A DNA stretch of 64,000 bases. Source: Hamiltosporidium tvaerminnensis FI-OER-3-3 (lineage: Eukaryota; Fungi; Microsporidia). A program made the translations under genes and the position numbers. Below the pieces are notes generated by a model. The model was not told the DNA's origin. It worked only from the letters and a program-made list of their open reading frames with translations, and made no database searches. This document shows positions 14,609 to 61,849 of the stretch, piece after piece (the stretch's first letter is position 1; each line of letters opens with the position of its first letter). Location: positions 1,178,001-1,242,000 of the forward strand of contig CM061248.1 in NCBI GenBank assembly GCA_022605425.2. The letters are read 5' to 3'.

Positions 14609-15315
14609 TGGTGGAGGGAGGATAACCCCAATAAAAACTTGCTACTTGGTAGTTAAGTTGAAGTATAAAATCATTGTTTGGATTTTAAATGGTATAAAAC
14701 CACACTACATTTTCGGTTATTCCATTGGTGTTGCTATGAGGAGGGGAAGATCTATTAAATGGCGAAACCTTTTCTGCAAATTTATTTCCAGTTTTTTATG
14801 TATCTAGATGGAAGACTGCAAGCGAACTTGCTGGTAATCGCCATGGAAACTCAAGGGAAAATAGCTTTGTACCTCCGGGTTAGAATACTTGGCGCCCTGG
14901 GATCTAAAAATAAAACTTTAAAAGCCGGGAAAACCAAGATGCAGATTATACCTGTTGATATGACGTTGCCTGTTTGAGTGAACTCCGTACAAGTTGCCTA
15001 AATATATATTAACAAGAAGCGTATTAGTTTTAGAAGGTGTAGAGTTGTGGGAACGCTGCATAGTCTCAAGAAAGCTTGGTGTAGGCTTCGGCATCACATA
15101 CCACGCAACGAACATTAACAAACACCGGGCAACTTCCTCGCCTATTAAATAGGTTCTATACACCTCTTAGATGAAAATCTTTGAGGCCTAGGTATCGCAA
15201 ATAGGCATTTATAGGTATTGGGGTAGCTGTTATTTATGTTAAATCTAGAACTACGTTAATGTCGTGCAAACAAGTATATCACTTACCACTGTTTTAAAAA
15301 GAGGTGAGATTTTTG
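14609..15315 (+). mobile_element. Structured non-coding element, copy A (divergent subfamily)
   Basis: Begins TGGTGGAGGGAGGATAACC and ends ccactgttttaaaaagaggtgag. Colinear with copies B/C, with compensatory changes. Confidence 0.85.
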
Positions 15316-17367
15316 GTAGTAGTTATATTTTTAGTATTCTATTTAATCTTAACATATTTAATCCTACACTTATCCTTTTTATTATACATTTTTATATTTT
15401 AATTTTTTTGCTATATTATCTTTATTAATTGCCTATTATTTCTATATCAAGAGAATAATATATTGGAGATTAATTATTAGTTAATTATACTATTTATCGT
15501 TATGTTATTCGTTTATATGTAGGGATAGATGTACTATAATTTCTTTTAATACAGATATTGATATTGATGGACTATTTAATGTCACGGGCCAATAAGCCCC
15601 CCATGTCCAATAGAACCCCCTTTATTCTCTACTGATTTATAGAACCCCCGTTATTTCTTATGATTTATAGAACCCCCGTTATTTTCATATATTTTACCTA
15701 AGGGCCAAATATTTTAAAAATAGAAGTTATTTATCTCTAAATTTAATAGGGGGTCTCTTTAAAAATTGCTTATATAGTTTTTAACTTGAATTTCGCGCCA
15801 AAAAAAATATTTCAAGTTTTGCCAGAATTAAAATAAAAACTTTAATGATAATACTTAAATAATAAAAAATGCCTATAATAATTGCAAAGTAAACCAAATT
15901 AAACACGTTTTATTACGTCTCCAAAAACTGTTCTGATGTCACCATCATTGTTTTTTTACTTCAATCATGTTGTTCATCAAAATACCGGCAACTGTAAAAA
16001 CCGAATTATCGTAAAAAGAGTCAAAAGGCGCTCTTTTGGTTTTAGTATTCCTATCGAACTCATTTTTTTTTATCAAAACTTGATTTTTAATAGACAAATC
16101 TCTCTTGAGTTTATTTGAATTGTTGCTTTCTATAATTATTTCTCTATAGTTTTTAAAATGCTTAGCCCCATCCGAACGAATCTTACATTCGATTTCAAGA
16201 CCATCAGCTATTATAGTGGTTGTGGTGGTTACTGTTTCAGTAACTTATTCATGTATAACCGAGGCAATTTCTAGGCTTCATTTTGTTTTTCCTGCATTTT
16301 ATTCGGCTAAAACCATATCAGGATCTATATCAATAGCAGGCATCATCGTACTGGCTTCGTTTTCAACTATTATGATTCCAGAAATTGTATTGTTAAAACC
16401 TGGCTTTCCGAAAAAAGCATAAATAGAGATTTGTTTGTTGCACTATTTATTGTTCTTTTATATGAATAAACAACATTTTTACGATATTCAATCAATTTTC
16501 TTACACTTGTTTCATGCAATTTCTTCGCTAGCCATCTTTTTATGGTTTGATTTACACGTCCCGGTTGACCTTGCGCTCTTGGATTGCGTGGTCTTCCATG
16601 TAAATTTTGATGTTAATATTTGTTAAAAAGGCATCAAGTAGTGCATTTTTAAACTCTTGACCGTTATCGGATTGTATTTCCACCGACACACCGAAGTTGT
16701 CAAAAAAAATTTACTGCATCTCTTACTAATTCCGAGGTTTTATTAATCAGCTTAAAGCTCCACAGATATTTTATGTATGTGTCAATTTCATTACGAATCC
16801 GGATATATTGATCATTTTGATCACTGTATCCCTTGAGATCTACATAATCCTCCATAAAGTATCATATTTTTTGGTAAAATGATTTATATATATTGCCCTG
16901 AATTGTTTTCAGAAAATTGAATCGAATAAATGTTTCACGGTCTTTAACATACTTTTTTATGTATTCCTTGGGAATTCCATAGTATTTATGTGCAATCAAA
17001 CCATCATTTTATTTACTCCGACGTGTGCAACAGCATGCTCTGTTTGAATAATTTGTTTATTCAAGGCAGTTTCAAATCCAAAAACGGCTCTTATTGGATG
17101 ATCGCGTCTTTTAAAGCAAATATCATCTCCGAGCAAAGTAAAATGTTCTGCCTCCTGCCTCCTGCCTCAACAACCACTTTTCTTTTTGAAATACTTAAAA
17201 AAAACAAAAAATAGGCAACCATTATTCAAATGTATATACAATTTTATGTTTTTTGGTATCTTTTCAAATCTTCAACGAAATTTTGCCTATAAAATACTAA
17301 CAAGTGCAAAAAACCGAAAAAGCAAAAAAAGAACCTAAACGAAAATATAAATTTTATTGGATATTTT

Positions 17368-19477
17368 TGGTGGAGAGAGGATAACCACATAAAAAACTTT
17401 CTGCTTGGCAATGAGTGTGTGAAACTGGTGTGAAGATCGATGTTTGTATTTTTGGTGGGAATACAACTACACTACATCTTCGGTTGTTCCATGGGATTTG
17501 TTATGAGGAATAGAGGTCTAAGAAATGGTGAAACTTTTTCTACGAATTTATTTGTAGTTTTTTATGTAACCCGATTACAGACTGCAGCTGAACATGTAGG
17601 TAATTGCCATGTAAAAGCATGGAAACATAGCCTTGCTCACTCGGGTTATAAGACTTAGTGCCTGGGATATATAAAAAACAAAACCATTAAAAGCCGGGAG
17701 AGCTAAGTAGCAGGTTAATCCTGTTGGTATGACATTGCACTGTTTAGGTGGACCCCATGTAAGTCTCTGAAATATATCTTAGCTAAAAGTTTATTGGGTT
17801 CAGAAAATGTAGAGTAAGTGGGAATGCTGCATAGTCTTGGGGGAGCCCAGGGGGGCTTCGGCCTTCGATCACACTCCATGCAACGGACATTAACGAACTC
17901 CGGGCAACTGCCTCGCCTATTAATTAGGTTCTACACACCTGGTAGATGAAAGGCTTTAGGACGTAGGTATCGCAGGGGTTACCGATGGAGTGTTGGGGTA
18001 GCAGTCATTTATGTTAAACCTAGAACTGCGTTAATGTCATGTAAAACAAATATAACACTTGCCACTATTTTAAAAAGATGTGATTAAATTAATAAAATTC
18101 TGGGTTAATAGATTTTCTCTCGTTTAACTAATTTCTTCCATCACTTTAACCACTTTATTCTCTTTTTCGACATCCGACTTATCATTAATGTCTATCGTCG
18201 GTTCCTCTGGTCTGGTTAGGTCATCTAAAATAAGGAGTAAAATATTTTTTGAATTTACTTGTTTAACACTATCTTCCTCGTTCTTCACTTCTTTTAAGGG
18301 GGGTGTTGGCTGTTTATGCATCTCAGCTCCTATAATAACACTTAATGACGCTCTCTCCCAGCTCTCTTCGGCACTTGGTCCTGACTCAATTCCTCTTCGT
18401 CGATCGAAGGAAATCATTTCGACTGTTTTCTTAATTACTATGGACTGAATGTATGCCTCTACATTTATGGGTATTTGTAATCTTTTAAGATAAGTCTTAT
18501 GGTATTTTGTCACAATACCGTCCCATGTTATCACATAAGGAATTATCTCTACACTACATTTGTAAATAAGACCCAGCTCATTTGCTAATAGGTCATACTT
18601 CCTAAGTTTCTCTGTTTCAACTATTTGAAGTGAGTCTTGGGAGGTGATTCCTACTTCAATGAGGGTAATCTTATTTCGTCTCTTGTCTAAAACGAATATA
18701 TCTGGCCTATTATTTCGAATTTTGACATCAGTTTTTATTCTGGTGTCCACTCTTATCTCTGCATACTCATTATCAAGAATTTCTTGAACTGAGTGGCTTC
18801 TGATTCGTTTTGAAGACTTGAATTTATATTTATTTAACAAGAGCAAATGTATACATCGTACCACTTCATTGTGTCGTCTAGTATAGTCATGACCAAGCAT
18901 TTTTTCACATCTCGTTGCTAAATGGTCTACTGTTTTTCTAGACGTGTTGCAGTGTTGACACACACCTTCTGCTCCCCAAAATACGTTTCTATCCTGGATA
19001 TAGCAGAACACTGCTTCATCACGCGGTCTTACACTTCCTTTCTTTAACCATCTTGAGGAGTCATTTACGCTTACTAGCTCGTTGTTTCTAGCATTATATA
19101 ACTTTGAATGTAGTTTTCGTTTTTCTATTTCGTTATATAAGTTAGCTAGTTGAGCTTCATCTAATTTATTTTTAGTGACCTCCTCTGCCATCCCGTATTT
19201 TACTTGTAAAAAGTCTTTTATTAATGCAAGATGGGTTTTATTATCATTCTCCACCTTAAGGATTGCTGCTCTTCTGGTCGATGTTTCTTTAGATTTTTCC
19301 AGACAATCCAAGAGTTGCAAAAGCATATGTTCGCTTTTGAACTCAACACTATGAAGACCTCTCCCAAGTTCTGTTCTGGGAGGGTACAGACGCTCTTTAC
19401 ATCCTAGGCGAAGATGTATCTTGTTATTTACTAAAACTGCACGTACTGCGTCAAAAGATGTGATACTTTTAAATAAA
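17368..19477 (+). mobile_element. Structured non-coding element, copy B (17368-18084 plus 19465-19477), interrupted by an R4-like fragment
   Basis: Closely similar to copy C. Its tail acttttaaataaa resumes at 19465. Degenerate TSD ttattggatatttt (17354-17367) / ttactggatacttt (19478-19491). Confidence 0.85.
18085..19452 (-). mobile_element. 5'-truncated R4/Dong-like RLE non-LTR retrotransposon
   Basis: CCHC (CQHC..HLATRC), RRHN and RPDI..IEVGIT..K..KY endonuclease motifs. Near identical to 26467-27835. 12-bp TSD aaaagatgtgat (18073-18084 / 19453-19464). Confidence 0.92.
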
Positions 19478-21428: not shown

Positions 21429-21510
21429 TGATGGAGGGAGGATAACCACAATAAAAACTATCTGCTTGGCGAAGAGTCTATATAAATGATGTGAATATCA
21501 TTTGAGTTAC
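21429..21510 (+). repeat. 5' fragment of the structured non-coding element
   Basis: tgatggagggaggataaccacaataaaaactatctgcttggc matches the element start. Confidence 0.75.
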
Positions 21511-22799
21511 TTCGATATTATTAAGCCAGCTGGATATATAGGCATATCACCTATAATTCCGAGTTATAACAGATTGAAAGAGGACGGGGGTTAGTAAGTA
21601 TGTTTAATTCTCACAATGTTTAGCTCGTGGAAAATAAACTTAATTTTACATTTAACGTAAATCACGACAATTCATATTGTCTTCTTAAACTTTGTTATCA
21701 TTCCCAAATTTCTCAAAAATTTCCATTGGGTTATAAGACTCAGCTGATTTATTTTCTCGTAGTTTTAGAGCCTTTCATTCATAATTCTTACCGTCCCTGA
21801 GCGATTTCATAATATAACTTCTTATCTGCAGGTATGAAACTATTTTGCAACATATATTTTGCTTTATTTAAAATTTTTATTAGCTTTAGTTGATGTTTTT
21901 TTTTGTCATTTAGAGTTACCATTTATTTCCATCGCCTTAAAATTTCCATTTCTTTAGTCATAAGATGTGTTAAAGTTTTCTTTGACTGAATATTCGATTT
22001 TTTAGCGAATGCCGCATAATTTATAATTAATTGAAATTTTTCTGGCTATCTATTTTTGAAAAATTAAAAATTAATTAAATATTATAATTTCAGTACCTTT
22101 TTAATAATAATTGCTTTATGCAGTTAATATTAAATATAAATAAATTTCCCAGTGAAATGGTTGAGAAATTGATTGTGTCTACATTTTTCATTAATGTAAA
22201 AAAGCTTCTAAAAAACAAAAAAATCTATTTAATGAATGCCATTTTAGAAACCAAAAGGTTAAAAAAATCCTACATGTTTTATTCTGTTCTTTAACCTTCG
22301 GTGTAGAAGATGACCAAATATAATTTTCACATTTTTAACTTTTAATTTGTTATAAATCGGAATTATATTTAATTGGCTTATAAATTTAGTATGCTTTATA
22401 TCTCACTAAACCGGAAACAATTGTTTTTAGACCAATTCTACATACTCTATGCCGGATAGATAGTTTTAAATGTGGTTTTATAAACCCTGCGCTCTAAATA
22501 GATGAAAGAAATTGGAAAAGTATATATTTATGCTTTTAATATGCTGTAATATAATAAAAGAAAATTTCATATTACTTGTGAATGTTTTTTTAACTATTCA
22601 CATTTTTTCAAGTGTTTTAAGTTCTACTTCGGAAACCAAAAAGATTTCTGTTAAAATTATAGAAAAATCACAAGTTTTGAGTTCTTGATTAAGAAACTAT
22701 TATTCTTTCTTAGTTTTCTGAATATGTTTGATATTACGAGTTATGCCGTGCTTTGTTAGATCCCTGCTCGAATATATCTTTTATATTTCTGATTTTCTT

Positions 22800-24978: not shown

Positions 24979-25994
24979 ATTCCTATTTTATAAAACTTCT
25001 TTTAATTTTCTATTTAACTTCAGAATGATCTAAAAATATCATGAAGACAACCAAAAAAGGCCTCGATTAAATGTTTAGATTTTAAACCTAAATCATATTT
25101 CATCTATTTTTTTTATTAGCATTTTCTACCCTGGTACAATATTTTTTCTTAATCAAATATATTTTGAGTTACAGCAAATGACTTCCTTTATCCTATGCCG
25201 AAATACCTCTTTAAGATATTTACGATCACTCTATTATGCGTTTATAGAAGACACCCTGCAAAGGTCCTAAAAAATTTAAGAACAAATATTGCATATTATT
25301 ATGTTCTCCCGGTTTCTTTGTTATACTCTCTTCTTATATTACGGTATAAAAGTAAAAGCGTACTAATATGAAGAGTAAAAAAACCAAATATCCTTACATC
25401 TTTTTCATTCCTTCTTAAAATCTATTTTTTTAGCTTGGCTTTTTGTTTTTTTTTCATTTGTTTAAACTTTTATTGAACTATTGAAGACTTATATAAATAT
25501 AACAATCCTAAAAACATAGAGAAGATATAACTAAAGCAAATATATAACATTTTTAAATTTTTATCGTTATTTTTATTCTTCCTAATTGTCCCAACATTTT
25601 CTAGCTCATATTGCGGTTTTTATTGAGATATTTTATTGTTGCACCGAAACTGTAGTTTCCCATGAAATAAAAACATAACAATAAATTTTTGTATGATCTC
25701 ATAGGATCGAAAATGAGAAGATTTGCTAGATTTCGCCTTTGGATACAGGTATTGTTTTTATAAAAACCAAATGGTGTGTTATAATTGATTTCCAAAGCAC
25801 CCTATAAGATATTTAAGTCGTCGATGTGTTATAAATGGTATTGGAAGAGGTATGAATAGCCTGCCAGTTTATCTACTTACTTACATATTCCCTTCTACCC
25901 TTTCCTCTCATTGTCTAGGCTGAACAAATAAAAGTTTTCATGGGGTTTTTTAATCGTTATACCTCGAAAATATAGCTGCTTGGCCTATGGATCC

Positions 25995-26099
25995 AGAGTG
26001 TTTATAACCCCACTAAAACCCCAATATGATTTTTACCTTTATTTCCCATGCAAATTACCAGGCAAATAGTTTTTAATGTGGTTATCCTTTCCCCACCCA
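25995..26099 (-). repeat. Divergent 5' portion of the structured non-coding element
   Basis: ccaggcaaatagtttttaatgtggttatcctttccccaccca aligns with the reverse-complement start of the element. Similarity may extend further left. Confidence 0.6.
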
Positions 26100-26466
26100 A
26101 AGATTATATAATTTTTTATCTATCATATTTCAATTTAAAAAATAAAGCCAGAGGAACCAACAATAATTTTGTTTTATTTGTAAACTTTTTTTACTTCTTA
26201 TACATATTATTTGTAATAAAGTACACAAGAACAGAAATATCTGTCAATCAATGAAATATCATTCTGATGCTAAGAATATATTAATTTTGTTATTTTTCTT
26301 GAGAGAAATTCTAGTAAGGTAAATGAATCTAAAGTTTTGAGTATAGGGTTTTTCGATCAATATAATAATCCTTGCAATCAATATAATAATTTTTCGATCA
26401 ATATAATAATCCTTGCAAACAATAAAATAATTTTTCGATCAATATAATAATCCTTGCAATCAATAT

Positions 26467-29400
26467 TTATTTTGTAAAATTCTGGGTTAACAAATTTTCT
26501 CTCGTTTAACTAATTTCTTCCATCACTTTAACCACTTTATTCTCTTTTTCTACATCCGACTTATCATTAATGTCTATCGTCGGTTCCTCTGGTCTGGTTA
26601 CGTCATCTAAAATAAGGGGTAAAATATTTTTTGAATTTACTTGTTTAACACTATCTTCCTCGTTCTTCACTTCTTTTAAGGGGGGTGTTGGCTCTTTATG
26701 CATCTCAGCTCCTATAATAACACTTAATGACGCTCTCTCCCAGCTCTCTTCGGCACTTGGTCCTGACTCAATTCCTCTTCGTCGATCGAAGGAAATCATT
26801 TCGACTGTTTTCTTAATAACTATGGACTGAATGTATGCCTCTACATTTATGGGTATTTGTAATCTTTTAAGATAAGTCTTATGGTATTTTGTCACAATAC
26901 CGTCCCATGTTATCACATAAGGAATTATCTCTACACTACATTTGTAAATAAGACCCAGCTCATTTGCTAATAGGTCATACTTCCTAAGTTTCTCTGTTTC
27001 AACTATTTGAAGTGAGTCTTGGGAGGTGATTCCTACTTCAATGAGGGTAATCTTATTTCGTCTCTTGTCTAAAACGAATATATCTGGCCTATTATTTCGA
27101 ATTTTGACATCAGTTTTTATTCTGGTGTCCACTCTTATCTCTGCATACTCATTATCAAGAATTTCTTGAACTGAGTGGCTTCTGATTCGTTTTGAAGACT
27201 TGAATTTATATTTATTTAACAAGAGCAAATGTATACATCGTACCACTTCATTGTGTCGTCTAGTATAGTCATGACCAAGCATTTTTTCACATCTCGTTGC
27301 TAAATGGTCTACCGTTTTTCTAGACGTGTTGCAGTGTTGACACACACCTTCTGCTCTCCAAAATACGTTTCTATCCTGGATATAGCAGAACACTGCTTCA
27401 TCACGCGGTCTTACACTTCCTTTCTTTAACCATCTTGAGGAGTCATTTACACTTACTAGCTCGTTGTTTCTAGCATTATATAACTTTGAATGTAGTTTTC
27501 GTTTTTCTATTTCGTTATATAAGTTAGCTAGTTGAGCTTCATCTAATTTATTTTTAGTGACCTCCTCTGCCATCCCGTATTTTACTTGTAAAAAGTCTTT
27601 TATTAATGCAAGATGGGTTTTATTATCATTCTCCACCTTAAGGATTGCTGCTCTTCTGGTCGATGTTTCTTTAGATTTTTCCAGACAATCCAAGAGTTGC
27701 AAAAGCATATGTTCGCTTTTGAACTCAACACTATGAAGACCTCTCCCAAGTTCTGTTCTGGGAAGGTACAGACGCTCTTTACATCCTGGGCGAAGATGTA
27801 TCTTGTTCTTTATTAAAACTGCACGTACTGCGTCATCCAACTTTGAGAAGTCGCCAGGTTCAAGTCGAAGTACACCTATATGATAGTTTATTAGAGATAT
27901 CGCATGTTGATTGATAGCTTGAAATAAATTTCTTGCATTCAATCTCGTGCGGCAAAGTCTCTCTACCCTCGCTATCAGTTTGGTTTGTACTTCCTCAAAC
28001 GACTTACGTGTTGGAATTCCTCTGCTATCTTCTATTATTCCGAGGTATTTGTAAACATCTATTCCTTCAAGAAGAGTAGCAGTATTCTCACAACACGAAT
28101 CATTTGTGGCCGACTTCTCTCTGTTTATTTCTAATCCTATATTTTTCATAAACATTTTTACTTCCTCCGTCATCTTTTCAAGCGTTGTTCCATCTTTGGC
28201 AAGGAGCTTAAGATCATCAATGAACAAGAGATGATTGGTAGAGTGGGGTGCATCCTCCGTTTGTATTGTCACCTTTGCGTATTCTTCATTGAGTTTACGG
28301 CTCAATGGATCCATACACAGCACAAACAATAAGGGTGACAAACTATCTCCCTGTAGAATCCCCTTATCAATCTTCTTGTTCATAATTTTTTCAGACCCTA
28401 CCGAAATATCAATTTTCCATTTTTATATTGTTACCTTAATAAATTTCAGGATCCAATCAGGTAAATTAAGGTTTTCGATGACTTGTGTCAAATAAGCATG
28501 ATCTATTGAATCATACGCTTTTTTGACATCAATCCACGTCGCCTCAAGATTGTTTCCATACTCTTTATTAATGGCAACATTTAGCAGGGCCTGCTCCTTC
28601 GCTCCTTGCGCACCTCTCACTGCACCCAATTGATTATCTGCTAGTAACCCTCGCCTCTCTACCTCAAGCTGAACAACTTTTGTAACACACTTTGTCGTCA
28701 GCTTGTAAAGGTTTGACATACAAGTTATTGGCCTATAGTCGGAGCCTTTTTGTGGTACGCTTTTTGGAATGAGATATGTTAGCCCATGATAAAACCAATT
28801 AGCCTGTGGTGTTCCTTCAAAACATATGGCTTTCACAATATCATAAAGATACTTGTGAAGAGTCGTAAGTTTTTTGATATAAAAATTGTAGATCCCATCA
28901 ATTCCGGCGGCTTTCCAGTTAGGAAGCCAATTGATAATATCTACAAATTCATCAATGAAGGAAACGTGGCCTGGTGAGTATCCGGCACGAAAGGTATCAG
29001 ATACTCATCATACGTAACTATTTCATTATTTTTGTTCCACATTGTGGACCAAAAACTTACAATTTCGTCACGATTAACCACATGCTCGGATTCCACACGC
29101 TCAGACAGGCCACGATAATATCTACCTCGGAACAACTCAAACATACGATTCTCTTTTCGGAATTGCTTCCTACTTTCGTACATCGTAAGTTTTTTTTCGT
29201 AAACAGTTATCAGCTCATTCTTCTATCCTACAGCCTCCGATAGATCATTTGTTTTGTTTAGGTCTAAATTAAACTCTCGCATAATTTTTTTAAGACTTTT
29301 AGTTTGAGAAGAGGAGAGTTCTTCTCGTTTACGTGCTTTCTCGAGGATATCTTTTGAAAGTTTTAACACTGAAATTTTACTCTCAATGCTTTCTTTCCAC

Positions 29401-30262
29401 GCTGATCTTGGCCTCTCTTTACGTGTTTCATCGTCATAACATACCTGTGCTGTCTGGATAATTCGGGCAACGTCTGTTATCGTCATAGGTACATGAGAGT
29501 CAGCATATTCACCGACTATTCGATTAATAAGATCAAGAACTGTAGTGTCAACCAATTCATTTGGAAGCTTTCGAGTTCGGACTACTACTTTTCCGATTTC
29601 CTCCTCAGATATTTTTTTGATATTACTCAAGTATTTTTCTCTCAGGCTTATAAATCGAGTAGCATCGGTCAAGGAACATGGCTCGGCGAGACAAGTGGCG
29701 ATTCGACGTCGCTCTCCATTCTCTTCCTGCCTAATTTCCTCTTCCGTCTTATTGTGTGCCATTCTTTTTAGCACATCGATAGTTTCGGTACAGGAGAACT
29801 TCTCATTATAGTAGCTCTGTATCTCTTTCCATCCATTTCTAGGCATTCGGTCAAACCTTGTTTGTACTGCAAAAAGAACACATCGAATAAATTCTTGACG
29901 CTCGGCCTCTATAGATCTGAGTATGAATCGGAGTACAACGAGCCTTTCGGAAATAGGTATGGTACAAAGGTTTGGCCAACTAGCAGCTATATCTGGCCTA
30001 GGGGTCACGGTGCTTGAATGCATAGGGTTAGATGGCGAGGGTATGGTGTTAAGCAAGCATACCTTTGTGTTTGTGTTTGCTTCGCTTGGTGGTATAGAAA
30101 TGTTATTTATGATGGTGGATGGTGTGTATGAGCTTGGCTGTGGAATTCCCTGGTCGTTTTTACACTCTCTAATTACCTCATCCACTTCACTTGCCCTGTT
30201 TGCAGCCTTTATTATTTTTTCTTCTTGTTTTTCGCTGCCTACATATTTTCTTATACCCATTT
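26467..30262 (-). mobile_element. Full-length R4/Dong-like RLE non-LTR retrotransposon (ORF broken into 4-5 pieces), inserted in the left TIR
   Basis: RT motifs WKAAGIDG, YRPITC, DVKKAYD, QGDSLSP, LFIDD, YKYLG, followed by CCHC and RLE. 13-bp TSD ttgcaatcaatat (26454-26466 / 30263-30275). Confidence 0.93.
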
Positions 30263-30367
30263 TTGCAATCAATATAATAATTATTTTTAAAAAATAAAAA
30301 TTTAAAAAATAGAAATTTAAAAAATAGAAATTGAAAAAATAAAATTATAAATAGTACTTGAGATTTA

Positions 30368-40400: not shown

Positions 40401-40535
40401 TCGTAATATGTAGATGTTAAAGGGTGGGTTGTTAGCCCTACGCCCAACCCCGGCCTGAAGGACCAGTTCCTTTTAGTCGCCTCTTACGACAAGCAGAGAA
40501 TACTCCAAGCCAATTCTGCTCCCGGCATGTAGGGA
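37436..40535 (-). mobile_element. Degraded RTE-clade non-LTR retrotransposon (APE + RT)
   Basis: APE motifs IDIVALQEMRW, INAYA, DMNAKIG, QIDHIFID, SDIDH. RT YANDI. Structured 5' end at 40420-40535. Many stops. Confidence 0.85.
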
Positions 40536-40805
40536 AAAATCATCTATATTAAACATAGAATTTCTTAATGTCATGAAAAAAATACAACACATGTCACAGT
40601 TCCAAAAATTATAAAAATCATAAAGAAAACCGAGAATAATTATAGAAAAAATAAAATATGAAATAAAAAATTAAAAAAAAGGCAAAAACAAAGAATCAAC
40701 GCTCTTTTACTAACGCATACCCTTCATCTCATATCCCATCTCATAATCTATTCATTAAACTTTCTTATTAACTTCCTATATACCCCCACCAATACTTAAT
40801 AACTC

Positions 40806-46152: not shown

Positions 46153-46655
46153 ATTTATATAGACACTGAAAGTGTTAATATAAATAAAAAAAATATAAAA
46201 ATCGCCACTGTTTCAAGAAGATGTGATATATTTCAAAGAAAACTAACCCTTTATAAATATGTTTTATTTTTTTATGCACTACTTTATCTTTTTTTTGTAT
46301 AGATTCTACTTAATACTTCTTTAATATTTTATTTTTCTTTATAAGAATCAATTTATTATTCTATTTGTTATATTTGTATATTATTAGACGTTTTATCATT
46401 TTAAAGATATTTTTCATTTGTATACTAAAAAATATTTAAGAAGAAATAATTTTAATTGAAGTGTAAGTAGATTCTATAATAACCATATTTTGTTTTTCTT
46501 TTATATATTCGAATACTTTGTTACAGTTTATTCATTTTTAATTTTAATAACTCTTAGGAATATGAAATTTATAAAAAAATTTATAAAAAAAGACATTAAA
46601 TTTTTGTTTAAAAATAAATATCCCATCGACCATTTTTTAGACAAATTATATAGCA

Positions 46656-47621: not shown

Positions 47622-48920
47622 ATAATATATAACAATTGCTTTAGTTTTTTTTAAAAAGTATATTTTTTAGTTTTTCACATCTTAAAAACGAATATTACTC
47701 CATCAAGTTTTTCTTTTGAAATTAAAATTTTTTATATCTCAAAAAAAAATTGAATCACATTATTTATTTGAAAAATATCACAAATCTCAAAAAAAAATGA
47801 GAATATAAGTTTTTATGGTATTATGACGGTTCTAATATAAAGGAATTGTTACTTTCGCAAAACCAATTTGGATCAAATTCTATACCGCAATCAGAAATTT
47901 TTTTATATTAAGAAAGTGTGATATTCATTATATAAACAAGAAAAATGTACTGGATTCTGCTAATATTTTTTGTATAAGCTTGATTATGTTTCCATTGTGC
48001 TCGTTTTTCCCTGATTTAAGTGCGACTTTTTACATACTCCAAACGTTCCTCCCCAATCCGAATTAGAGTCAGTTTTGTATTGGAAACTTACACGGGAATA
48101 CTAGAAAGTGTAGTTTTATATTACAGGAGCAGACCGCCATCAGCTTTTCTGGCCTTTTCAATGTAACTTTTTCTTTATTTTTGACAGGCTTATAGTATTC
48201 CAACTTGTGTGAGACCGTGTAAGTTTCTATGCTTTTTATAGCAATTACCCAAAATTTATATTTTTTTCTTTATAGTTAGATAAAAAACTCTAAACTTTTA
48301 TTAAAAAAGCTGTACAAATTTGCAGATCATCTTTTTCACATACGAATTTTATGAAACGGTCGAATGTTAGCGTATTTATCATTCGTATCAAATCTTCAAA
48401 CAATAATTTCTTATTCCCCATACAATTAGTTACCAAGCAAATGCTTTTATATGTGATTATCTCCCATCGAGCCTTTAAATAAATGATTTTTTTTAAAAAA
48501 ATGAAAAGGCTCATTCCCTACAAAAAGATAAAGTGTCAAGATGTTAGCCATTCCAAATGAGAAACAAATTTATTTTCAACTAAATTGTTTATTTTATGAA
48601 TGAGAAAAATCTGCTTTTAGTTACCGCCTGTTTAATTTATCCGATCAAAATTTCATAAGACACACCATAAAAAAAGTAACAAAGCTTAATTTCACATATA
48701 GACTGTCTGTAATACCTATTGAAAAAAAGTAGCTAATAAAATGTTCTAATAAATATTTTTTTAAAGGTGATTATATCCATGCTTCTGTTTTTTCTACCGA
48801 TTGAACCTACATATTATTGAAAATGAAAAAAATACTGTAAAATTCTAATTTAAGAATATAAAAACCTAGAATTTCCATATAATTTTAAAAGGCACAAATT
48901 TATTTAAATATTTCCAGGCC

Positions 48921-51243
48921 CTATCTTCTCCTACTTTGTAACAATATGTTCGTATTAAATTTCTCTTCAATAAATTTAATAGTTTCTGCAGCTAAATTAT
49001 CCGCTTCAAAAATATATTTCAGCTCAATGTAACCTTCATTATTAAACAAAAATTTTATCCAACGGTAAACCTCTCCCTGTATATCACATGATCTAAATAG
49101 GATATCTTCAATTTTCTTTAAATTTGCAATAAATATTAAATCTTTTTCTGATATATTTATTTCATCAAACTCCATTCTTTCTATTTTATATTCCCGTGAG
49201 GCACAAAATAATTCTGAAAAACTAATATTTCGGAAATTAATTCTAACAATATTTAATTTTTTTAGATTACATAAATTACTGAATGCCTTTACATCTAAAT
49301 TATCGATGGAAAAATCTCTGATAATTAGTTTCTTTATACCCCACATTTCATAGTTTTGAAATAAATTATTTAAAGGACTTGAAGATAATTTCAAATTTTC
49401 TTCATCTTTACTCGTGGCTTCAAAATCAAATTTTTCATTTTTTTCTGAACGTTTTATGAAATCAATCATTTCATTTATATCCCAAAGATCTAACTCTGTA
49501 ATATAAAAAATTTGATTCACAACACGGTTTAACTTTATAGTGTTTGTTTTATTAAAGTATATTTCTTGAAGACCTATCATCATATCTATCAACTTGAAAA
49601 ACTACAAAAACTACCACTGTTGTTATGGGAGAAACTAAAATATTTTATAGATTCGTTTATAAAAATTTCATTTTCAATAAAGATATCTGAATTATTTATT
49701 TCTAATCTTTCTAGCCCTTTTATATTTAAAATATCTCTTAGAAAACCAGATTTTATTGCAGAAGATCTAATTTCAATACACTTTATATTTTCTTCTAAAA
49801 TAGTATTTTCTGTTATAATAAACCGTTTATCATTTAATTTTTCGAAAGTAATTGAAATATTATTAAAACACCCTTTATACTCATAAAAACATTTGAATTC
49901 CAAATTCTTATTCTTGCATTCAAAATTTTCAGTTATTTTAACTTTATCTCTAAATTTGTCTTCATTAAGTAATTTTAAATAAAAATCTTTATTTGCTTTT
50001 GGTATATTTTCATTTTCCTTGATATATTTTTCGATGGAATGTTGTGGGTGTATATGCTTCAGACTTTGTATTATAAACTTTGCTATATTAAGATACCCTT
50101 CTTCGATTTCATCGAGAGTATATCTATCATAAATATACCCTTCAAAAAATATAAATTCGTTAATATTGGCTAAATTCTCTCTGAATATGAAACTTGTGTT
50201 GAATCTAGATTCAATAAAAACTATCTTTTTTAAATTTTTAAAATTTAAATTTGCATTTAGAGAACAAATTACATCATCAGATATGTAACACCAAAAGAAT
50301 ACAAGCTCATCAATCTTCTTTTTTAAATTTTTTAAAATAAAACAAAAACTCTTCGAATTCGCTCTGTTTAAATACTTTATATGCAAATATTTTATATCTA
50401 ATGTATTTAGAAACATTAAAAATAAACATTGACTTTTATGATTCACACCATCTTTTTTATAAAAAAATGATCAAACTCGTCATTAATTACTAAAGTATGT
50501 TTTTTATCTTCCCTAAATAAACTTTTATATTCATCAGAGATATCATATTCATATTCTTTTATAAAAAACAAAAATTTTAAATCTTTTCCGTTATTCAGTA
50601 GTTTTAAATATTGTTGTGATATTTTTTTGAATAAAGCATGTGAGAAATAGCCTTGCTTTGAAAAATGAAACAATTCTTTTTCAATGTTAAAATTATTCAT
50701 TTCATCAGATTTCACTAAAGAACACCAAATATTTTTTATCACATTTCGCAATTTATTATCATATTCAACTCTAAAATATTCTAAAAAATACAATATTGTG
50801 TAAAACTTCTTAATTGTCATTTTATGTACCGGTAAATAATATGAAATTATACACGCATAGCATATTAAAAAATCAGATTTCTTTATATGATGACAAAGAT
50901 ATATTTCTATATTATTGTTCATATTGTTAAACTTTTCAAATATATCAAACTTAAGACCAATTCTCTCAATAAATTCTATACAATACTGTTCATATTGCCT
51001 ATTTGAATCTCTGACAAACATTCTTTCTAAACAGTTTTTTTCGTAATTTGCATTAGTCTCATCTCTTTTGATTTGATATAGACATTTAGGCTTGAGATCA
51101 TTATTGCCTAAAGCTATGTAAGACTCTTCATTTTCATTTACAACATTAAATATAATATTTCTTTTACTCGAATAATAGATAAACACAAAAGAAAGTGGTT
51201 TATATAATAACGTTATGAAATGGAAGCACAGATTAAATTTCAT
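48921..51243 (-). pseudogene. Signal-peptide/LRR-like family member 2 (two single-base frameshifts, possibly sequencing errors)
   Basis: Three ORFs overlap by 4 nt. Comparison with member 1 shows 1-nt deletions at ~50446 and ~49592. Confidence 0.8.
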
Positions 51244-51935
51244 AAATTTTAGAAAAAAATCCGTATTTATAATTTTAAAATCAATTTACTATTTTAGTTT
51301 GTATTTATAAAAATTCTGATTTTTTTCATAAAACGTCAAGAATGATGTGGCTTGCAATTTAAATTAATTAAAATTTTATAAAATGTTTTGAATTATAAAA
51401 AATTAAAAGGTTCACGTTTAAACAATTGTTGGTTTTCTAAACGTCAAATTTTATTGAATAACAATACTATTTGTAGAATTTTAATAAACGAATATTTCTT
51501 ATGATGTCCGATAATTTTTTGTAGTTTAAAGAATCGATAATTGACTGTTACTAAGATTTCAGTTAAGTTTTATATTACTAATTACAACAAAAATTCGATT
51601 CTTTAATTTTTTGCAGAATTTCTCTCAATATAAAATACGAATTTTGATTATTCTTAAAATAAGAATTATATTTCATTGGCTGACTGTCATTTGATTTTGC
51701 TTGTCTACTTTAAAACGAATAATATCTATATAAAAAGTAAAAAAAATAGTTATTGAAATGTAAGAATATACACTGTAAAGCCTAGGTGTAATTATGGAAA
51801 AGTTTAGAAAAATATCTATACAAAATACAAAAATAAACTGTTACGAAATGTAAACATCATAATATGTAGTGATCGGTTTTAGCATTGATTTTTTTTGTTT
51901 CTATTAAAATTATTTTGTGTATATGAACTCGCGAA

Positions 51936-54900
51936 ATGGGTAGAAGAAAAAAAGTTGACAGCGAAAATATAAAAAATGAAGAAATAAAGGCTGTAAACAA
52001 CTCGGAAATTAGTTTAAAAGAGACAAAAACGTGTGATAGAGATGAAGTGACTATATAAGAGACACTTCCACCACAAGCGACCATCCATAATAACACCCAC
52101 TCCCCATCGAGCACTATGTTATATGTTACTTCAGTCAGCCTGCTCGATTCCGCCCCCTTCTTCCTGTCCCGATTCTTCTGCGGGTGGACCAGCCAACACA
52201 ATGGAAAACCTCAATGCACCTGCCATTCCAGAAGGAATTCGACAGATGTTATTGCATTCAATACTTGACTCTGTCACGGCCGTAGAACAGGAATGGCCTA
52301 GATCTGCTATGTCAGCAGTGCAAAAAATGTTTGAGGAATGCCTAGAAATGGCTGGTCTGCAATTCTTAGGTACTATAATGGGAAATTTGGTCGAACTGTT
52401 GATATCGATGTGTTAAAAAAATTAACACATAATGAGGTAGAAAGGGAAAAAAGGAAAGAAAAGGATGGAGAGCGACGTAGAATCGCCACTTGTCTCCCCG
52501 AGCCATTTTCCTTAACTGACACTACACTCTATATGAACCTGAGAGAAAAGTTCTTGTTTAAAATCAAGGAACTCTCTGAGAAGGAAATCGGAGATGTAGT
52601 AGTCCGAACAAGAAAACTTCCAAGTGAATTGGTTGATAGTAAAGTTTTGGAACTCATAAATCGGATCACAAGTGAATGTACTGAATTTCATGTGCCTAAG
52701 AATGTTAGTGATGCAGCTCGAATCATCCAGGCGGCCCAGGTATGCTATGACGAGGAAACGCGTAAGGAGAAGCCTAGATCTGCTTGGAAGGAGAACATAG
52801 AAAGTAAAATTTCTAAGTTAGTACTTTCCAAAGACCTCCTCGAGAAGGCTCGTAAACTAGAAAAGCTCTCTACTTCGGAAACGAAAAGTCTCAGAAAAAT
52901 TATGCGAGAGTTTAATCTAGACTTAAGCAAAATAAATGATCTCACTGAGGCTTTGGTTAAGAAGAATGAGGCTTTGAATGTGTACGAGAAAAAAATTACG
53001 ATGTATGAAAGTAGAAGGAAATTTCGAAAAGAGAATCGTATGTTTGTATTATTCCGAGCTCGATTCTATCCAGGTTATTCGAGCGGTTTGAATCCGAGCA
53101 TGTGGTTAATCGTATACGAAATTCCGGAATTTTGGTCTACAATGTGGAACAAAAATGATAAAGTAGTACATATGATGAGTATTTAATACCTTTCGGTCAA
53201 ATACGCAACAGACCACGTTTCCTTCACTTGAAGAGTTTAAAGATATTATCAATTGACTGCCTAACTGGAAAGACGCTGGAATTGATGGTAATTATAACTT
53301 TTACATCAAGAAACTTACAAGCCTTCAAAAATATCTTTACGATATTGTGAAAGTCATATTTTTAGAATTAACGCCTCAAGCCGACTGGTATTATTGTGGA
53401 CTTACTTATCTGATACCTAAAGGTACACCAAAGACTGGCTCTGATTACAGGCCAATAACCTGTATGTCAAACCTGTATAAACTGACTAAAAAATGTCTTT
53501 CTAGCGTGATTCGAGTTGAGGTGGAAAGACGAGGATTGCTTTCAGAAAACCAGTTGGGAGCGGTTAGAGGAGTGCAAGGAGCGAAAGAGCAGGCTCTACA
53601 CAATATTGCTTTAAATAAAGGGTACGGAAATAATCGTAAGACAACATGGATTGATGTTAAGAAAGCTTCTGATTCAATAGATCATGCAAATTTTACTCAA
53701 TGCATTGAAAACCTTAATTTACCTGATTGTATCTTGAAATTTATTAAGGTAATTGTATGAAAATTTAAAATTGATATTTCGGTAGGGTCTGAAAAAATTA
53801 TGAACAAGAAGATTGATAAGGGGATTCTACAGGGAGATAGTTTGTCACCATTATTGTTTGTTTTGTGTATGGATCCATTGAGCCGAAAGCTTAATGAGAA
53901 ATACACAAAGGTGATAATACAAACAGATGCAGAATCCCACGCAACTAATCATCTCTTGTTTATTGATGATATTAAGCTCCTTGCCGAAGATGGTCAAACA
54001 TTGGAAGAAATGACGGAGGAGGTTAAAAAGTTTATGAACAATATAGGATTGGAAGTTAACAAAGAGAAGTCAGCCACTAATGATCCATGTTGTGAAGATA
54101 CTGCTACTCTTCTTGAAGGAATAGGTGTTTATAAATACCTTGGAATTATAGAAGATAGCAGAGGAATTCCAACAAGTAAGTCTTTTGAGGGAGTACAGAC
54201 TAAACTTATAGCACGAGTAGAAAGACTTTGTCGCACGAGATTAAATGCAAGAAATTTATTTCAAGTCATTAATCAACATGCAATTTCTTTACTAAACTAT
54301 CATATAGGTGTACTTCGACTTGGACCGGCTGACTTCTTTAAGTTAGATGATGCGGTGCGTGCAGTGTTAGTAAAGAACAAAATACATCTACGCCCAGGAT
54401 GCAAAGAACGTCTATACCTTCCACGTAAAGAACTTGGAAGAGGTTTACATAGTGTCGAGTTCAAAAGCGAACATATGCTTTTGCAACTCTTGGATTGTCT
54501 GAAAAAACATAAAGATACATCGATCAGAAGAGCAGCTATCCTAAAGGTTGAGAATAATAGTAAAACACATCTTTCAGCAATTAAAAACCTTTTAAAAATA
54601 AAATACGGGTTGGAAGAGGAAGTCACAAAAAAGAAAAAGGAAGAAGCTCAACATGCTAACCTATATAACGAAATCAAAACCGAAAACTACATTCAAAGTT
54701 ATATAGCGCTAGAAATAACGAGCTGGTAAGTGTAAATGACTCCTCAAGATGGTTAAAGAAAGGAAGTATAAGATCACGTGATGAAGCAAGTTTCTATTAT
54801 ATCCAGGATAGAAATGTATTCTGAGGTGCAGAAGGTATGTGTCAACACTGCTACCAGTCTAGGAAAACAGTTGATCATTTAGCAACGAGATGTGAAAAAA

Positions 54901-55718
54901 TGCTTGGTCATGACTATTCATGACAACATAATGGAGTGGTACGATGTATACATTTACAATTGCTGAATAAATATAAGTTTAAGTCTTCAAAACGAATAAG
55001 GAGTCACTCAGTTCAAGAAATTATTGATAATGAGTAGGCAGAGATAAGAGTGGACACCAGAATAAAAACTGATGTTAAAATTCGGAATAACAGGCCGGAC
55101 ATATTTATTTAGATAAGAAGAAGAATAAGATAACACTCATTGAAGTAGGAATCACTTCCCAAGATTCACTTCAAATAGTTGAAACTGAAAAACTTAGGAA
55201 GTGTGACATGCTAGCCAATGAATTGGGTCTTATTTATAAGTGTAATGTTGAGATAATCCTTTATGTGATGACCTGGGACGGTATTGTGACTAAAAAACAT
55301 ATGACGTATGTTAAGAGACTGCAAATACACATGAATGTAGAGGCATATATACAATCCATAGTACTCAAGAAGACGTTCAAAATAATTTCTTTTGATCGAC
55401 GAATAGGACTTGAGTCTGGACCAAATGCCGAAGAGAGCTGGGAGAGAGCATCATTAAGTGTTATTTTAGGAGCTGAGATGTATAAACAAGCAATACCCTC
55501 CTTAAAGCAAGAAGACAACGAGGAAGATGATGTTAAAACGGAAAATACAAAAAATATTTTACCCCTTATTTTGGATGGGATAACCACGGTTAAGGAACCG
55601 ACACTTAATGCAAATGAAGAGTTGGAGTTGGAGGAAGAAATAGAAGGAGTTAAAATGGTGGAAAGAATAATTTAAAGGGAAAAAATCGTCAACCCAGAAT
55701 TTTATTACCTAAAAATAC
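51936..55718 (+). mobile_element. Full-length, degraded R4/Dong-like RLE retrotransposon (second subfamily)
   Basis: Same RT/CCHC/RLE motifs as above. TSD aactcgcgaa at 51926-51935 / 55719-55728. Confidence 0.92.
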
Positions 55719-55822
55719 AACTCGCGAATATTTTAATTATTGATTGATTAAATTTTTTAACTCGATTAAATTCGAATAATTGTTGATTTCTTAGTTGCAT
55801 TTTTTTCAAAAATAATATTATT

Positions 55823-56549
55823 TTTATTTAAAAGTATCACATCTTTTTAAAATAGTGGCAAGTGTTATATTTGTTTTCATGACATTAACGCAGTTCTAGG
55901 TTTAACATAAATAACTGCTACCCCAAAACTCCATCAGTAACCCCTGCGATACCTACGTCCCAAAGCCTTTCATTTACCAGGTGTGTAGAACCTAATTACT
56001 AGGCGAGGCAGTTGCCCGGAGTTCGTTAATGTCCGTTGCATGGAGTGTGATCGAACGCCGAAGCCCCCCGGGCTCCCCCAAGACTATGCAGCATTCCCAC
56101 TTACTCTACACTTTCTGAACCCAATAAACTTCTAGCTAAGATATATTTCAGAGAATTACATGGGGTCCACCTAGACAGTGCAATGTCATACCAACAGGTA
56201 TAACCTGCTACTTAGCTCTCCCGGCTTTAAATGGTTTTTATTTTTATATCTCCCAGGCGCTAAGTCTTCTAACCCGAGTGAGCAAGGCTAGGTTTCCATG
56301 TTTTTACATGGCAATTACCTACATGTTCAGCTGCGGTCTGCAATCTGGTTACATAAAAAACTACAAATAAATTTGTAGAAAAAGTTTCTCCATTTCTTAG
56401 ACCTCTCCTCCTCATACAAACTCCCATGGAACAACCGAAGATGTAGTGTGGTTTTATTCCCACCAAAAATCCAAACAATGATCTCACACCAGTTTCACAC
56501 ACTCATTGCCAAGCAGAAAGTTTTTTATCTGGTTATCCTCCCTCCACTA
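55823..56549 (-). mobile_element. Structured non-coding element, copy C (intact, 19-bp TSD)
   Basis: TSD tttcaaaaataatattatt at 55804-55822 / 56550-56568. Confidence 0.92.
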
Positions 56550-57214
56550 TTTCAAAAATAATATTATTATAATTTATATCCAATTATGTGAAAAGTTTTA
56601 TTTTGGTACTCAACACCGAGAGGTACAAAAGGACTAGAATAAGAAATAAGTTTTATTGTGGTTTTTAAGATTCTTGAGGAAAAAAAGCAAACTAAGATAA
56701 TTAAATTACCAGGAAAAACAAGACTCAATTGAATATGAATGCCAATCGAGGAAAATAAAAGGCAAATTTGCTTGTTAAATTCATTGTAGCATTATACACC
56801 TTCGTATAGTGAAGAAGTATGAATCGACTTGTCTTGTTTTCAAAATACCATCTTCTCATACCCCACAAATTTATTTATCATCATACTTTCATTTATTTAG
56901 CGCATATTAAACTCTTGATCTCTGTATTCAAGCAATTAAATTTGTGAGAATTGGCCACTTCACGCCGAGTAATGATATAATAGAAGCCAAAAACTAGAAA
57001 GTCCGCAAAATTCTAAAGCAACACAGATATAGGTCTTAAAAAAGGCCTAAAAAAACCTTTCGGAAAACCAAGATATTATAATAAGATACTTTTGTTTCTT
57101 TAATTTTAATTTATTATAAACGATCAACATGGTCGGTAAATTAATGAAACTGGCCGAAAGTAACTTGGCGACACCATTTGATTTCGTAGGTTTTATATCT
57201 TGATACTAATTTCA

Positions 57215-58128
57215 ATTTTAAAACTATCACATCTTTTTTAAACAGCGGAAAATGTTGTTTTATTTTCATGAAATGCAGGGGGTTCAGGTTTAAAATAAAT
57301 TACTACTCATCTTCTATTCTTAATAGGTACATCTGAAGATCCCCCTACAAAAAGGTTTTTATCTACAATTTTGTTAAATTATTAAATAATTTGAAATTTC
57401 AAAGTTTCGTTACCATTTATGTGAGTTGCCCGAATACAGTTCGGCCAAGAAGTGATTTTTCTTCATGCATTTAGGACAACTATTTCTCTCACAGTGATTT
57501 GCTTAAAACATCTTCGAGCAAATCACACGGATGGGATGGTCAAGATAAATATTTTAGTAAAAATCCGAGGGACTTTTTTGGCACATTTTTTTATGAGGGT
57601 GACACAGAAGTGGTTAATTTTGCTCCTAGGGTGTAATCGCGATCGAAACCCTACCTAAAGCACAAAATAGACCAGAAACATTTCCACATATTGTACACCT
57701 TTTGAACCTGTAACTTCCACATAAGATAAATATCTGCGACTTACATTAAGTTTAACTAGACGTTCCACATGTCATAACACGAGTGTAGCTTAATACTTTG
57801 CTGTTCTGGGGTTACTGGTTTTATTTTTGCTAATCCTCGGCCTCAAGTCTTTTTGCTCGAGCAAGCAAGACTAGGTTTCCATGCTTTTAAATGGAAAATA
57901 CCTATAAGTTTAGCTGCGGTCTATAATCTTGTTACATAAAGAACTTAAACCCTTCCTTGTATAAATTTTCTTTTTTTTAAACAATCTTATCCATATAAAA
58001 ATTTCTACGCAAATACCGAAAGTGCAATTTGATTTCATCCCACTAAAATTAAACAAGGATTTCCACTTAGTTTTTTAACACATTCATAAACAAAAGATAA
58101 TTTTAATGAGGTTATCCTCCCTCCACCA
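57215..58128 (-). mobile_element. Structured non-coding element, copy D (divergent, ~900 nt, internal expansion)
   Basis: Same termini (TGGTGGAGGGAGGATAACC ... TTTAAAAAAGATGTGAT) and shared blocks GACCGCAGCT and CATGGAAACCTAG. Confidence 0.8.
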
Positions 58129-61400: not shown

Positions 61401-61849
61401 ATGAATACCTTATTAAATAAAAATGATTTAAAAAATGCTCTGCTCTTATTCAGTGCGAAAAGATATAATGGTTAAGATTTTGGAAATTTCTACAGTAAAT
61501 GCCGATCTAATTCAGAATATTTCATGGTTTATTCTACGAATAGGAATGATTTGCGTTGGCTGGAAATCTATTTTTCGAAAATTATGTCTCACAAACCCCA
61601 AGAAATCAACAAAGCCCTAATTCACGTTTAGATTGTGTGCCATACATATTGAAACAAACAATTATATAGCAAATTCAAATAAACTGTATTAGAGAGGTGA
61701 GATATGCTTAATTTTGCTTTTATGCAGATTAAACCCAAATAGTTACCAAAAAGCAGAATAAACCGTAAATTTTTAATTGAAACACCCAAGACTTATAATC
61801 TATTTATAATTCCAAACAGCAAAATTTTAATTAAATATATAAAAGCCTT

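What the first reader, a model, noticed from the sequence alone, without database searches (positions are those of the whole stretch)
55823..56549. Unassigned ~720-nt mobile, covariation-supported structured RNA family
SEEN: four long copies (14609-15315 +, 17368-18084 +, 55823-56549 -, 57215-58128 -) and fragments (21429, ~26000-26099, ~46203-46230) share fixed termini TGGTGGAGGGAGGATAACC ... AAAAAGATGTGATACTTTTAAATAAA. There is no ORF conserved across subfamilies and no TIRs. Copy C has a perfect 19-bp TSD. Nested long-range helices in copy B: ATGACATT 17729/AATGTCAT 18033, TTTAGGT 17743/ACCTAGA 18018, ACCCCA 17752/TGGGGT 17994, GTAA-GT-CTCTG 17759/CAGGGGTTAC 17973, TGTAGAG 17808/TTCTACA 17929. 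There are two C(UUCG)G loops and a GAAA-loop hairpin. Differences between copies preserve pairing: CTTAG/CTAAG vs CTTGG/CCAAG, CTCTG/CAGGG vs TGCCTA/TAGGCA, GCCCGGGG/CTCCGGGC vs GCTTGGTGT/ACACCGGGC, CCTG/TAGG vs CCTC/GAGG. G-U wobbles and tetraloops identify the TGGTGG-first strand as the RNA. KNOWN: long variable TSDs are the mark of target-primed reverse transcription, and SINEs usually have tRNA/7SL/5S heads. This element has no such head and contains internal T5-T6 runs that would stop Pol III. INFERENCE: a large structured RNA (ribozyme-, IRES- or RNP-scaffold-like) mobilised in trans, probably by the co-resident R4-like RT, and under selection for its fold.
Basis: partly seen in the sequence, partly recalled or inferred. 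Interest (0 to 1): 0.92.

Follow-up and report, generated by a model that had tools for sequence, protein, structure and literature searches.

The report
Microsporidian SINE-like element, structured RNA
This is a real, very abundant ~730-base non-coding jumping element of the water-flea parasite Hamiltosporidium, most likely copied by the genome's own LINE retrotransposon; it has no recognisable parent RNA, and one odd single copy may be a working host RNA related to it.

Summary
The element is real and mobile. The genome is Hamiltosporidium tvaerminnensis. It holds 328 exact heads and 552 tails of the element, and 39 of 46 young copies have a target-site duplication (control 4%). It behaves as a SINE-like retroposon. 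The likely mobiliser is the resident R4-type LINE: similar TSD lengths, the same TTAAATAAA end without poly(A), one 13-bp target used by both, frequent adjacent insertions. There is no Rfam hit, tRNA, B box or ribozyme motif. The closest analogue is Entamoeba EhSINE1/EhLINE1.

'Covariation-supported family' is overstated. The signal comes from one single-copy variant, A (14609-15320): 9 double-compensatory changes against 2.4 expected (p=0.0005). Seven decayed copies show no excess, a global fold test is not significant, and the fold is not uniquely determined. A lacks TSD and LINE-like tail, ends in a hairpin plus an Sm-like motif, and is unusually conserved in H. magnivora, so it may be a host RNA gene. 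Telomerase RNA fails the template test; U1, RNase P and MRP lie elsewhere. The 'fragments' at 21429 and 26050 belong to a sister family with the same head. No RNA data were obtained. Other readers of this scan noted the family in many windows of this genome.

The parts
55823..56549 (-). Copy C: young full-length SINE-like element (727 nt), 97-98% identical to at least 40 other genomic copies
56550..56568 (-). 5' copy of the 19-bp target-site duplication of C
55804..55822 (-). 3' copy of the 19-bp target-site duplication of C
56443..56549 (-). ~105-nt modular head, shared with a sister family; candidate internal promoter (inferred). A-box-like start in some copies, no B box
55878..56192 (-). 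Structured 3' arm (nested long-range helices, UUCG- and GAAA-loop hairpins); fold not uniquely determined
55823..55831 (-). Terminal TTAAATAAA, shared with the RLE LINE 3' end; contains the species' A[A/U]UAAA polyadenylation hexamer; no poly(A) follows
17368..18084 (+). Copy B, body (94% to C); tail split by a LINE insertion
18085..19452 (-). 5'-truncated R4-type LINE inserted antisense into B's tail, 12-bp TSD at 18073-18084 and 19453-19464
19465..19477 (+). Displaced last bases of copy B, followed by B's decayed TSD (12 of 14 match to 17354-17367)
14609..15320 (+). Copy A: single-copy divergent variant (76-78%), compensatory changes, no TSD, ends in a hairpin plus GATTTTTGG (Sm-site-like); candidate host RNA gene or relict master
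57215..58128 (-). Copy D: old 914-nt variant with a different, itself structured ~310-nt middle; duplicated with its flanks 8 kb away
26467..30262 (-). Full-length R4-type (RT + CCHC + PD..D endonuclease) LINE in several ORF pieces, starts within 3 nt of its ATG, 13-bp TSD; probable mobilising family
51936..55718 (+). Second full-length R4-type LINE in several ORF pieces, 10-bp TSD, tail-to-tail with copy C about 105 nt apart
21429..21575 (+). Sister family: same head on a different body (also at 22480 and 26100 on the - strand)
25945..26100 (-). Sister family copy (head plus second body)
46174..46241 (+). Decayed tail-only fragment next to a truncated LINE
48077..48467 (-).
40522..40608 (+). 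Decayed 3' part abutting the 5' end of a degenerate RTE-like LINE; a matching head remnant may lie at 37261-37388

Best explanation
A non-autonomous, SINE-like retroposon family of Hamiltosporidium (at least ~550 copies), copied by target-primed reverse transcription using the RT and restriction-like endonuclease of the resident R4-type LINE. SHOWN: dispersed copies, fixed ends, variable TSDs, more tails than heads, no coding capacity, shared terminal TTAAATAAA, shared targets. INFERRED: a copy is transcribed from the start of its head, probably by Pol II because of an internal T6 run, no B box and a terminal AATAAA; the LINE protein binds the RNA 3' region, nicks AT-rich DNA and primes at or just beyond AAUAAA, which leaves 0-23 extra A/T-rich bases and no poly(A). 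The fold probably serves RNA stability or loading onto the LINE protein (inferred) and is partly inherited from the lineage represented by copy A.
For: 328 exact heads and 552 tails, controls 0. TSD in 39/46 young copies vs 11/272 mismatched pairs; exact TSDs mostly 9-19 bp, about 13 typical; LINE TSDs of 13, 10, 12 and 14 bp. LINE 3' end occurs 566 times and ends in the same 9 nt. The same 13-bp target beside a Tc1/mariner end is used by the LINE in the window and by the element in L022. LINE ends lie within 75 nt of 7/46 young copies, with overlapping TSDs in L015 and L027 (about 1 expected, p about 7e-5 if ~22 LINE ends are assumed). The LINE protein has RT, CCHC and PD..D..K motifs and its solved relatives are R2 proteins. 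Star-like tree with AT-biased decay of old copies. A[A/U]UAAA is this species' poly(A) signal (PMC10542269).
Against: Homology to the LINE is limited to about 9-11 A/T bases and is not significant on its own, unlike the ~70 bp shared by EhSINE1 and EhLINE1. No transcript was seen (one RNA run had no parasite reads). An RTE-like LINE is also present and its TSDs were not tabulated. The polymerase is unproven. R4 clade assignment rests on domain layout, not on a tree.
Confidence: 0.78

Rival explanations
1. Origin variant, compatible with the best explanation: copy A is a functional single-copy host non-coding RNA gene (Sm-class RNP-like, ~710 nt), and the SINE arose from it or its ancestor by gaining the LINE-type AAATAAA end.
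For: Unique in the genome; no TSD or LINE-like tail; 3' hairpin plus GATTTTTGG, matching the Sm consensus AU5-6GR quoted in PMC3603654; 9 double compensations vs 2.4 expected; two hairpins more stable than in the SINE consensus (-10.1 vs -2.1 and -7.3 vs -2.1); swapped strands pair worse than own strands; 2 substitutions in 712 nt against H. magnivora vs 143 in 6666 non-coding nt.
Against: A also breaks 25 consensus pairs (29 expected, not significant); its own fold z is only -0.8; the adjacent 380 nt are also invariant in one H. magnivora haplotype, so low divergence may be a shared tract; the Sm motif was noticed after the fact in AT-rich DNA; no expression data; no homologue outside the genus found.
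Confidence: 0.25
2. The element is a ribozyme or IRES that self-processes or recruits ribosomes.
For: GC-enriched, G-skewed strand with UUCG and GAAA loops and long-range helices; precise 5' ends could reflect processing.
Against: No Rfam family at E<=10 beyond noise; no hammerhead, HDV, twister or group II D5 motif in the consensus or A in loose pattern scans; no downstream ORF for an IRES.
Confidence: 0.06
3. Copy A is, or the family derives from, the telomerase RNA.
For: TERT is present; A has TAACCC near its 5' end, U-rich and A-rich tracts, a 4-bp stem with 5-nt loop and a terminal Sm-like site.
Against: Telomeres are pure TTAGGG; A reads TAACCCCAA, which would template TTGGGG; no template of 8 nt or more in consensus, A or D; no paralogue with a correct template behind the same head (hits equal control).
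Confidence: 0.04
4. Mobilised by the RTE-like (APE) LINE, or an internally deleted derivative or UTR of a LINE (SIDE, RIME-like).
For: An RTE-like element lies at 37420-40540; another reader reports the head on a LINE (s1-599655, not verified).
Against: No significant similarity between the consensus and either R4-type copy or the RTE copy (best E 0.27); the R4-type LINE has no 5' UTR to donate; end sequence and target sharing point to the R4-type family.
Confidence: 0.1

Closest known systems
EhSINE1/EhLINE1 of Entamoeba histolytica (PMC2996970, PMC3716655, PMC1635306)
   Same: 0.5-0.7 kb non-coding element with no identified precursor small RNA, only weak A/B-box resemblance, hundreds of copies, variable TSDs, AT/T-rich targets, partner LINE with a restriction-like endonuclease.
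   Different: EhSINE1 shares about 70 bp of 3' end with its LINE and has internal 26-27 bp repeats; here only about 9-11 terminal bases are shared, there are no internal repeats, the head is modular, and a unique structure-conserving variant exists.
Classical tRNA-, 7SL- or 5S-derived SINEs (own knowledge)
   Same: Head-body-tail modularity, LINE dependence, TSDs.
   Different: No tRNA by ARAGORN or Rfam, no B box, internal T6 run, no poly(A) or tandem-repeat tail.
RIME/NARTc and R2 SIDEs (internally deleted LINE derivatives; RIME/NARTc as described in PMC2996970, SIDEs from own knowledge)
   Same: Non-autonomous, non-Pol III origin.
   Different: Those resemble their LINE along their length or at both ends; this one does not.
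Fungal telomerase RNA and Sm-class snRNAs (PMC3603654)
   Same: Copy A only: length scale, terminal hairpin plus AU5GG, small stem-loop resembling P6.1.
   Different: No template for TTAGGG; U1, RNase P and MRP genes are elsewhere in the genome; pseudoknot not demonstrated.

Membership tests
SINE-like non-autonomous retroposon | Dispersed multicopy, non-coding, under 1 kb | tested here: met
SINE-like non-autonomous retroposon | Variable-length TSDs and no TIRs or LTRs | tested here: met
   TSDs; termini unlike each other (no dedicated repeat scan was run)
SINE-like non-autonomous retroposon | 3' tail homologous to a partner LINE | tested here: inconclusive
   only the terminal TTAAATAAA is shared; not significant against shuffles in two of three comparisons
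Classical SINE | Head derived from tRNA, 7SL or 5S with Pol III A and B boxes | tested here: not met
   A-box-like start in A and D only, no B box
Classical SINE | Pol III transcription | not testable with these tools
   no parasite RNA reads; internal T6 argues against
R4-type (RLE) LINE as partner | Single RT with C-terminal CCHC and PD..D endonuclease, no APE | tested here: met
R4-type (RLE) LINE as partner | Placement in the R4 clade on an RT tree | not tested
   no reference R4/Dong sequences were held
Telomerase RNA | Template of more than one repeat complementary to the telomere | tested here: not met
Telomerase RNA | Pseudoknot with U-A.U triples and CR4/5-like junction | tested here: inconclusive
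   U-rich and A-rich tracts and a 4-bp/5-nt hairpin exist, no covariation support
U1 snRNA, RNase P RNA, RNase MRP RNA | Covariance-model match | tested here: not met
   no match on C or A; genes found elsewhere at C11, C12, C1
Known ribozymes and IRES families | Rfam model or core motif match | tested here: not met
Known ribozymes and IRES families | Catalytic or translation activity | not testable with these tools
   needs a bench assay

The most novel reading that the evidence does not exclude
Copy A (14609-15320) is an undescribed, conserved ~710-nt Sm-class host RNA of a microsporidian, and an R4-type LINE turned it into a several-hundred-copy SINE by recognising a minimal AAUAAA end: a SINE born from a large structured RNP RNA rather than from tRNA, 7SL or 5S.
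Probability: 0.2. Interest if true: 0.82.

Novelty: new variant of a known kind. Interest (0 to 1): 0.52.

Why it matters
My literature searches found no description of SINEs in Hamiltosporidium, and 25% of this genome is unclassified repeat (PMC10542269). At roughly 550 or more copies the family is about 1-2% of the genome (my estimate). It gives a second likely case, after Entamoeba, of an orphan-headed SINE paired with a restriction-like-endonuclease LINE, here with almost no shared tail and a LINE that has no 5' UTR. That makes template choice by R2/R4-type proteins directly testable, which matters because such proteins are being developed for gene insertion (own knowledge). If copy A is a host gene, it would add a large unknown RNA to the minimal microsporidian ncRNA set (PMC5499648) and identify a new source class for SINEs.

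Tried and rejected
Rfam at gathering and E<=10 thresholds: noise only. ARAGORN on the window and 55 loci: no tRNA. JGI metagenome scan with the head pattern: one chance hit in a bacterial gene. Viral contigs: none. Loci of related LINEs in Enteropsectra, Vairimorpha, Astathelohania and one metagenome contig: no homologue of the element. Reads: one RNA run had no parasite reads; two runs covered intergenic DNA evenly and so are DNA; one gave a single 189-nt contig. Blind helix enumeration and consensus-fold permutation: A not above null. Head alignment: no consensus structure, so a tRNA D-arm reading of the first 20 nt stays a resemblance. U1-like motifs inside the body: out of order, no model match, real U1 elsewhere. 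The neighbouring 191-aa gene has no homologue outside the genus, so synteny could not be used.

Full report
SETTING. The window is contig 3 of a 21.64-Mb, 17-contig genome. Its Sec1 and kinase proteins cluster with Hamiltosporidium proteins, and size and contig number match the H. tvaerminnensis assembly of PMC10542269. The window carries ordinary microsporidian genes, DNA transposons, several copies of an RT element and a degenerate RTE-like LINE.

OBSERVATION. Self-comparison and a profile search recover the four long copies and further remnants. Copy C has the stated 19-bp TSD. The helix-strand coordinates given for copy B that I checked are exact. Rfam gives nothing at gathering threshold and only noise at E<=10. 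Three corrections follow from the sequence. B's tail was split by a 5'-truncated LINE inserted antisense with a 12-bp TSD. The pieces at 21429 and 26100 are the same ~105-nt head on another body, seen five times in the DNA held. A and D are not subfamilies: A is unique, and D has one twin made by a local inverted duplication that includes the flanks.

A MOBILE FAMILY. The genome holds 328 exact 15-nt heads and 552 tails with at most one mismatch; reversed-pattern controls give 0. At least 40 copies are 97-98% identical to C over the full length. Of 46 distinct young insertions, 39 have a TSD, against 11 of 272 mismatched flank pairs; exact TSDs are mostly 9-19 bp. The 5' end is fixed to within 1-3 nt. 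The 3' end is AAATAAA followed by 0-23 variable, A/T-rich bases and no poly(A). Old copies lie 0.06-0.4 substitutions per site from one consensus, on a star-like tree, with GC-to-AT bias. These are the marks of target-primed reverse transcription (established knowledge).

THE PARTNER. The RT element has RT, a CCHC knuckle and a PD..D..K endonuclease, and no APE domain; its solved relatives are R2 proteins. I call it R4-type from this layout; no tree was built. Full-length copies begin within 3 nt of the ATG. Its 3' end occurs 566 times and finishes with the same TTAAATAAA as the element, also without poly(A). Its TSDs are 13, 10, 12 and 14 bp. One 13-bp target next to a Tc1/mariner end is occupied by the LINE in this window and by the element at another locus (L022). 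LINE ends lie within 75 nt of 7 of 46 young copies, in either orientation and with separate or overlapping TSDs; about one is expected if some 22 LINE ends are spread evenly (the 22 is my estimate). Beyond the terminal 9-11 bases there is no significant homology between element and LINE at either end. A[A/U]UAAA is this species' polyadenylation hexamer, about 20 nt before the 3' ends. Inference: both RNAs are Pol II products and are primed at or just after AAUAAA. The internal T6 run and the missing B box fit this; microsporidian Pol III signals outside tRNA genes are poorly defined (PMC5499648), so it is not proven.

IS THE FOLD UNDER SELECTION? The head-first strand folds better than its complement, but z-scores are modest: -2.2 for C, -0.8 for A. 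A two-sequence consensus fold of A with the family consensus is no better than when A's substitutions are moved at random (z -0.2 overall, -1.2 for the 3' arm). The 3' arm has competing folds. Against that, on pairs predicted from the consensus alone, A has 9 double-compensatory changes where 2.4 are expected (p=0.0005; 7 vs 1.3 at higher confidence), three of them in one hairpin, and none of seven decayed copies shows an excess. Helix by helix, A retains pairing better than random substitutions at the same sites in four of thirteen helices (p 0.012, 0.025, 0.017, <0.002) and borderline in four more, while no decayed copy reaches 0.05; these helices were partly chosen with A in view. Two long-range helices pair within lineage and poorly across lineages. 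Among young copies, shared variants break 1 of 34 times on a hand-drawn helix model against 24 of 120 for private variants (p=0.017), but there is no difference on the RNAfold-only model. So selection on some helices is real between A and the family, and only suggested within the active family. One divergent lineage cannot define the structure.

COPY A. It is single-copy, has no TSD, lacks the AAATAAA tail and ends in a hairpin followed by GATTTTTGG, an Sm-site-like motif. Two of its hairpins are more stable than their counterparts in the family consensus. It sits at the same place in H. magnivora with 2 substitutions in 712 nt, against 143 in 6666 non-coding nt nearby; the next 380 nt are also invariant in one haplotype, so this is suggestive only. 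RNase MRP, RNase P and U1 genes are elsewhere. TERT is present, but telomeres are pure TTAGGG and A's TAACCCCAA would not template them; no correct-template paralogue was found. A is therefore either the relict of an extinct master lineage or an unknown host RNA gene.

COMPARISON. It works like EhSINE1 with EhLINE1: a 0.5-0.7 kb non-coding element without a known precursor RNA, variable TSDs, AT-rich targets and a restriction-like-endonuclease partner. It differs in sharing almost no tail with the LINE, in its modular head and in the structure-conserving singleton. It fails the membership test for classical Pol III SINEs, telomerase RNA, U1, RNase P/MRP and catalogued ribozymes. I found no paper describing it; Repbase and Dfam could not be searched. 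Many first readers of this scan noted the same family in other windows of this genome, which is repetition, not independent support.

LIMITS. No RNA evidence was obtained. No relative outside Hamiltosporidium was found.

VERDICT. A real, abundant, apparently undescribed SINE-like retroposon with a probable R4-type partner (0.78). The open and more interesting point is copy A as a possible host RNA gene (0.2-0.25). Interest 0.52.

Noticed in passing
window 26467-30262 (-) and 51936-55718 (+); L036, L054: Full-length R4-type LINEs start 0-3 nt before the ATG, with no 5' UTR, so their promoter must be inside the ORF or borrowed from the flank.
   Followed up: partly
window 21429 (+), 22480 (-), 26100 (-); L022:862, L007:3626: Sister family: the same ~105-nt head on a second body of roughly 130 nt or more; a third body follows the head at L022:211. 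The second body begins with a stretch that recalls a pogo/Tigger terminal repeat (from memory, untested).
   Followed up: partly
window 57300-57610 (-) and L061: The middle of copy D is unrelated to the family, folds well (z -2.2) and is more similar between the two D copies than the 5' part is; gene conversion or constraint.
   Followed up: partly
window 37420-40540 (-): Degenerate RTE-like LINE, apparently inserted into a very old copy of the element; its structured 5' end (40417-40538) recurs at 19878-19992. No Rfam hit.
   Followed up: partly
window 26186-26466 and 30197-31812; L022: Tc1/mariner element whose end is a target for both the LINE (window) and the SINE-like element (L022) at the same 13-bp site.
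   Followed up: yes
window 31811-37388, 48284-51584, 61591-64000: Three copies of a multi-kb cassette with LRR-like ORFs at 75-83% identity, in both orientations; one copy is interrupted by a piggyBac/IS4-type transposase in two ORF pieces (33612-35011).
   Followed up: no
window 40806-45113 (-): Ubiquitin-activating enzyme E1 swollen to 1435 aa by in-frame low-complexity repeats.
   Followed up: no
window 12893-13512: Tandem repeat array of about 76-bp period that differs in length in H. magnivora.
   Followed up: no
L018 and L028: Two young copies carry a duplicated first ~23 nt of the head, suggesting re-priming or template switching at the 5' end.
   Followed up: no
G000:C11:188752, C12:846018, C1:1345768, C4:420294: Single U1 snRNA, RNase P RNA, RNase MRP RNA and TERT (911-aa frame) loci located in this genome.
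   Followed up: no
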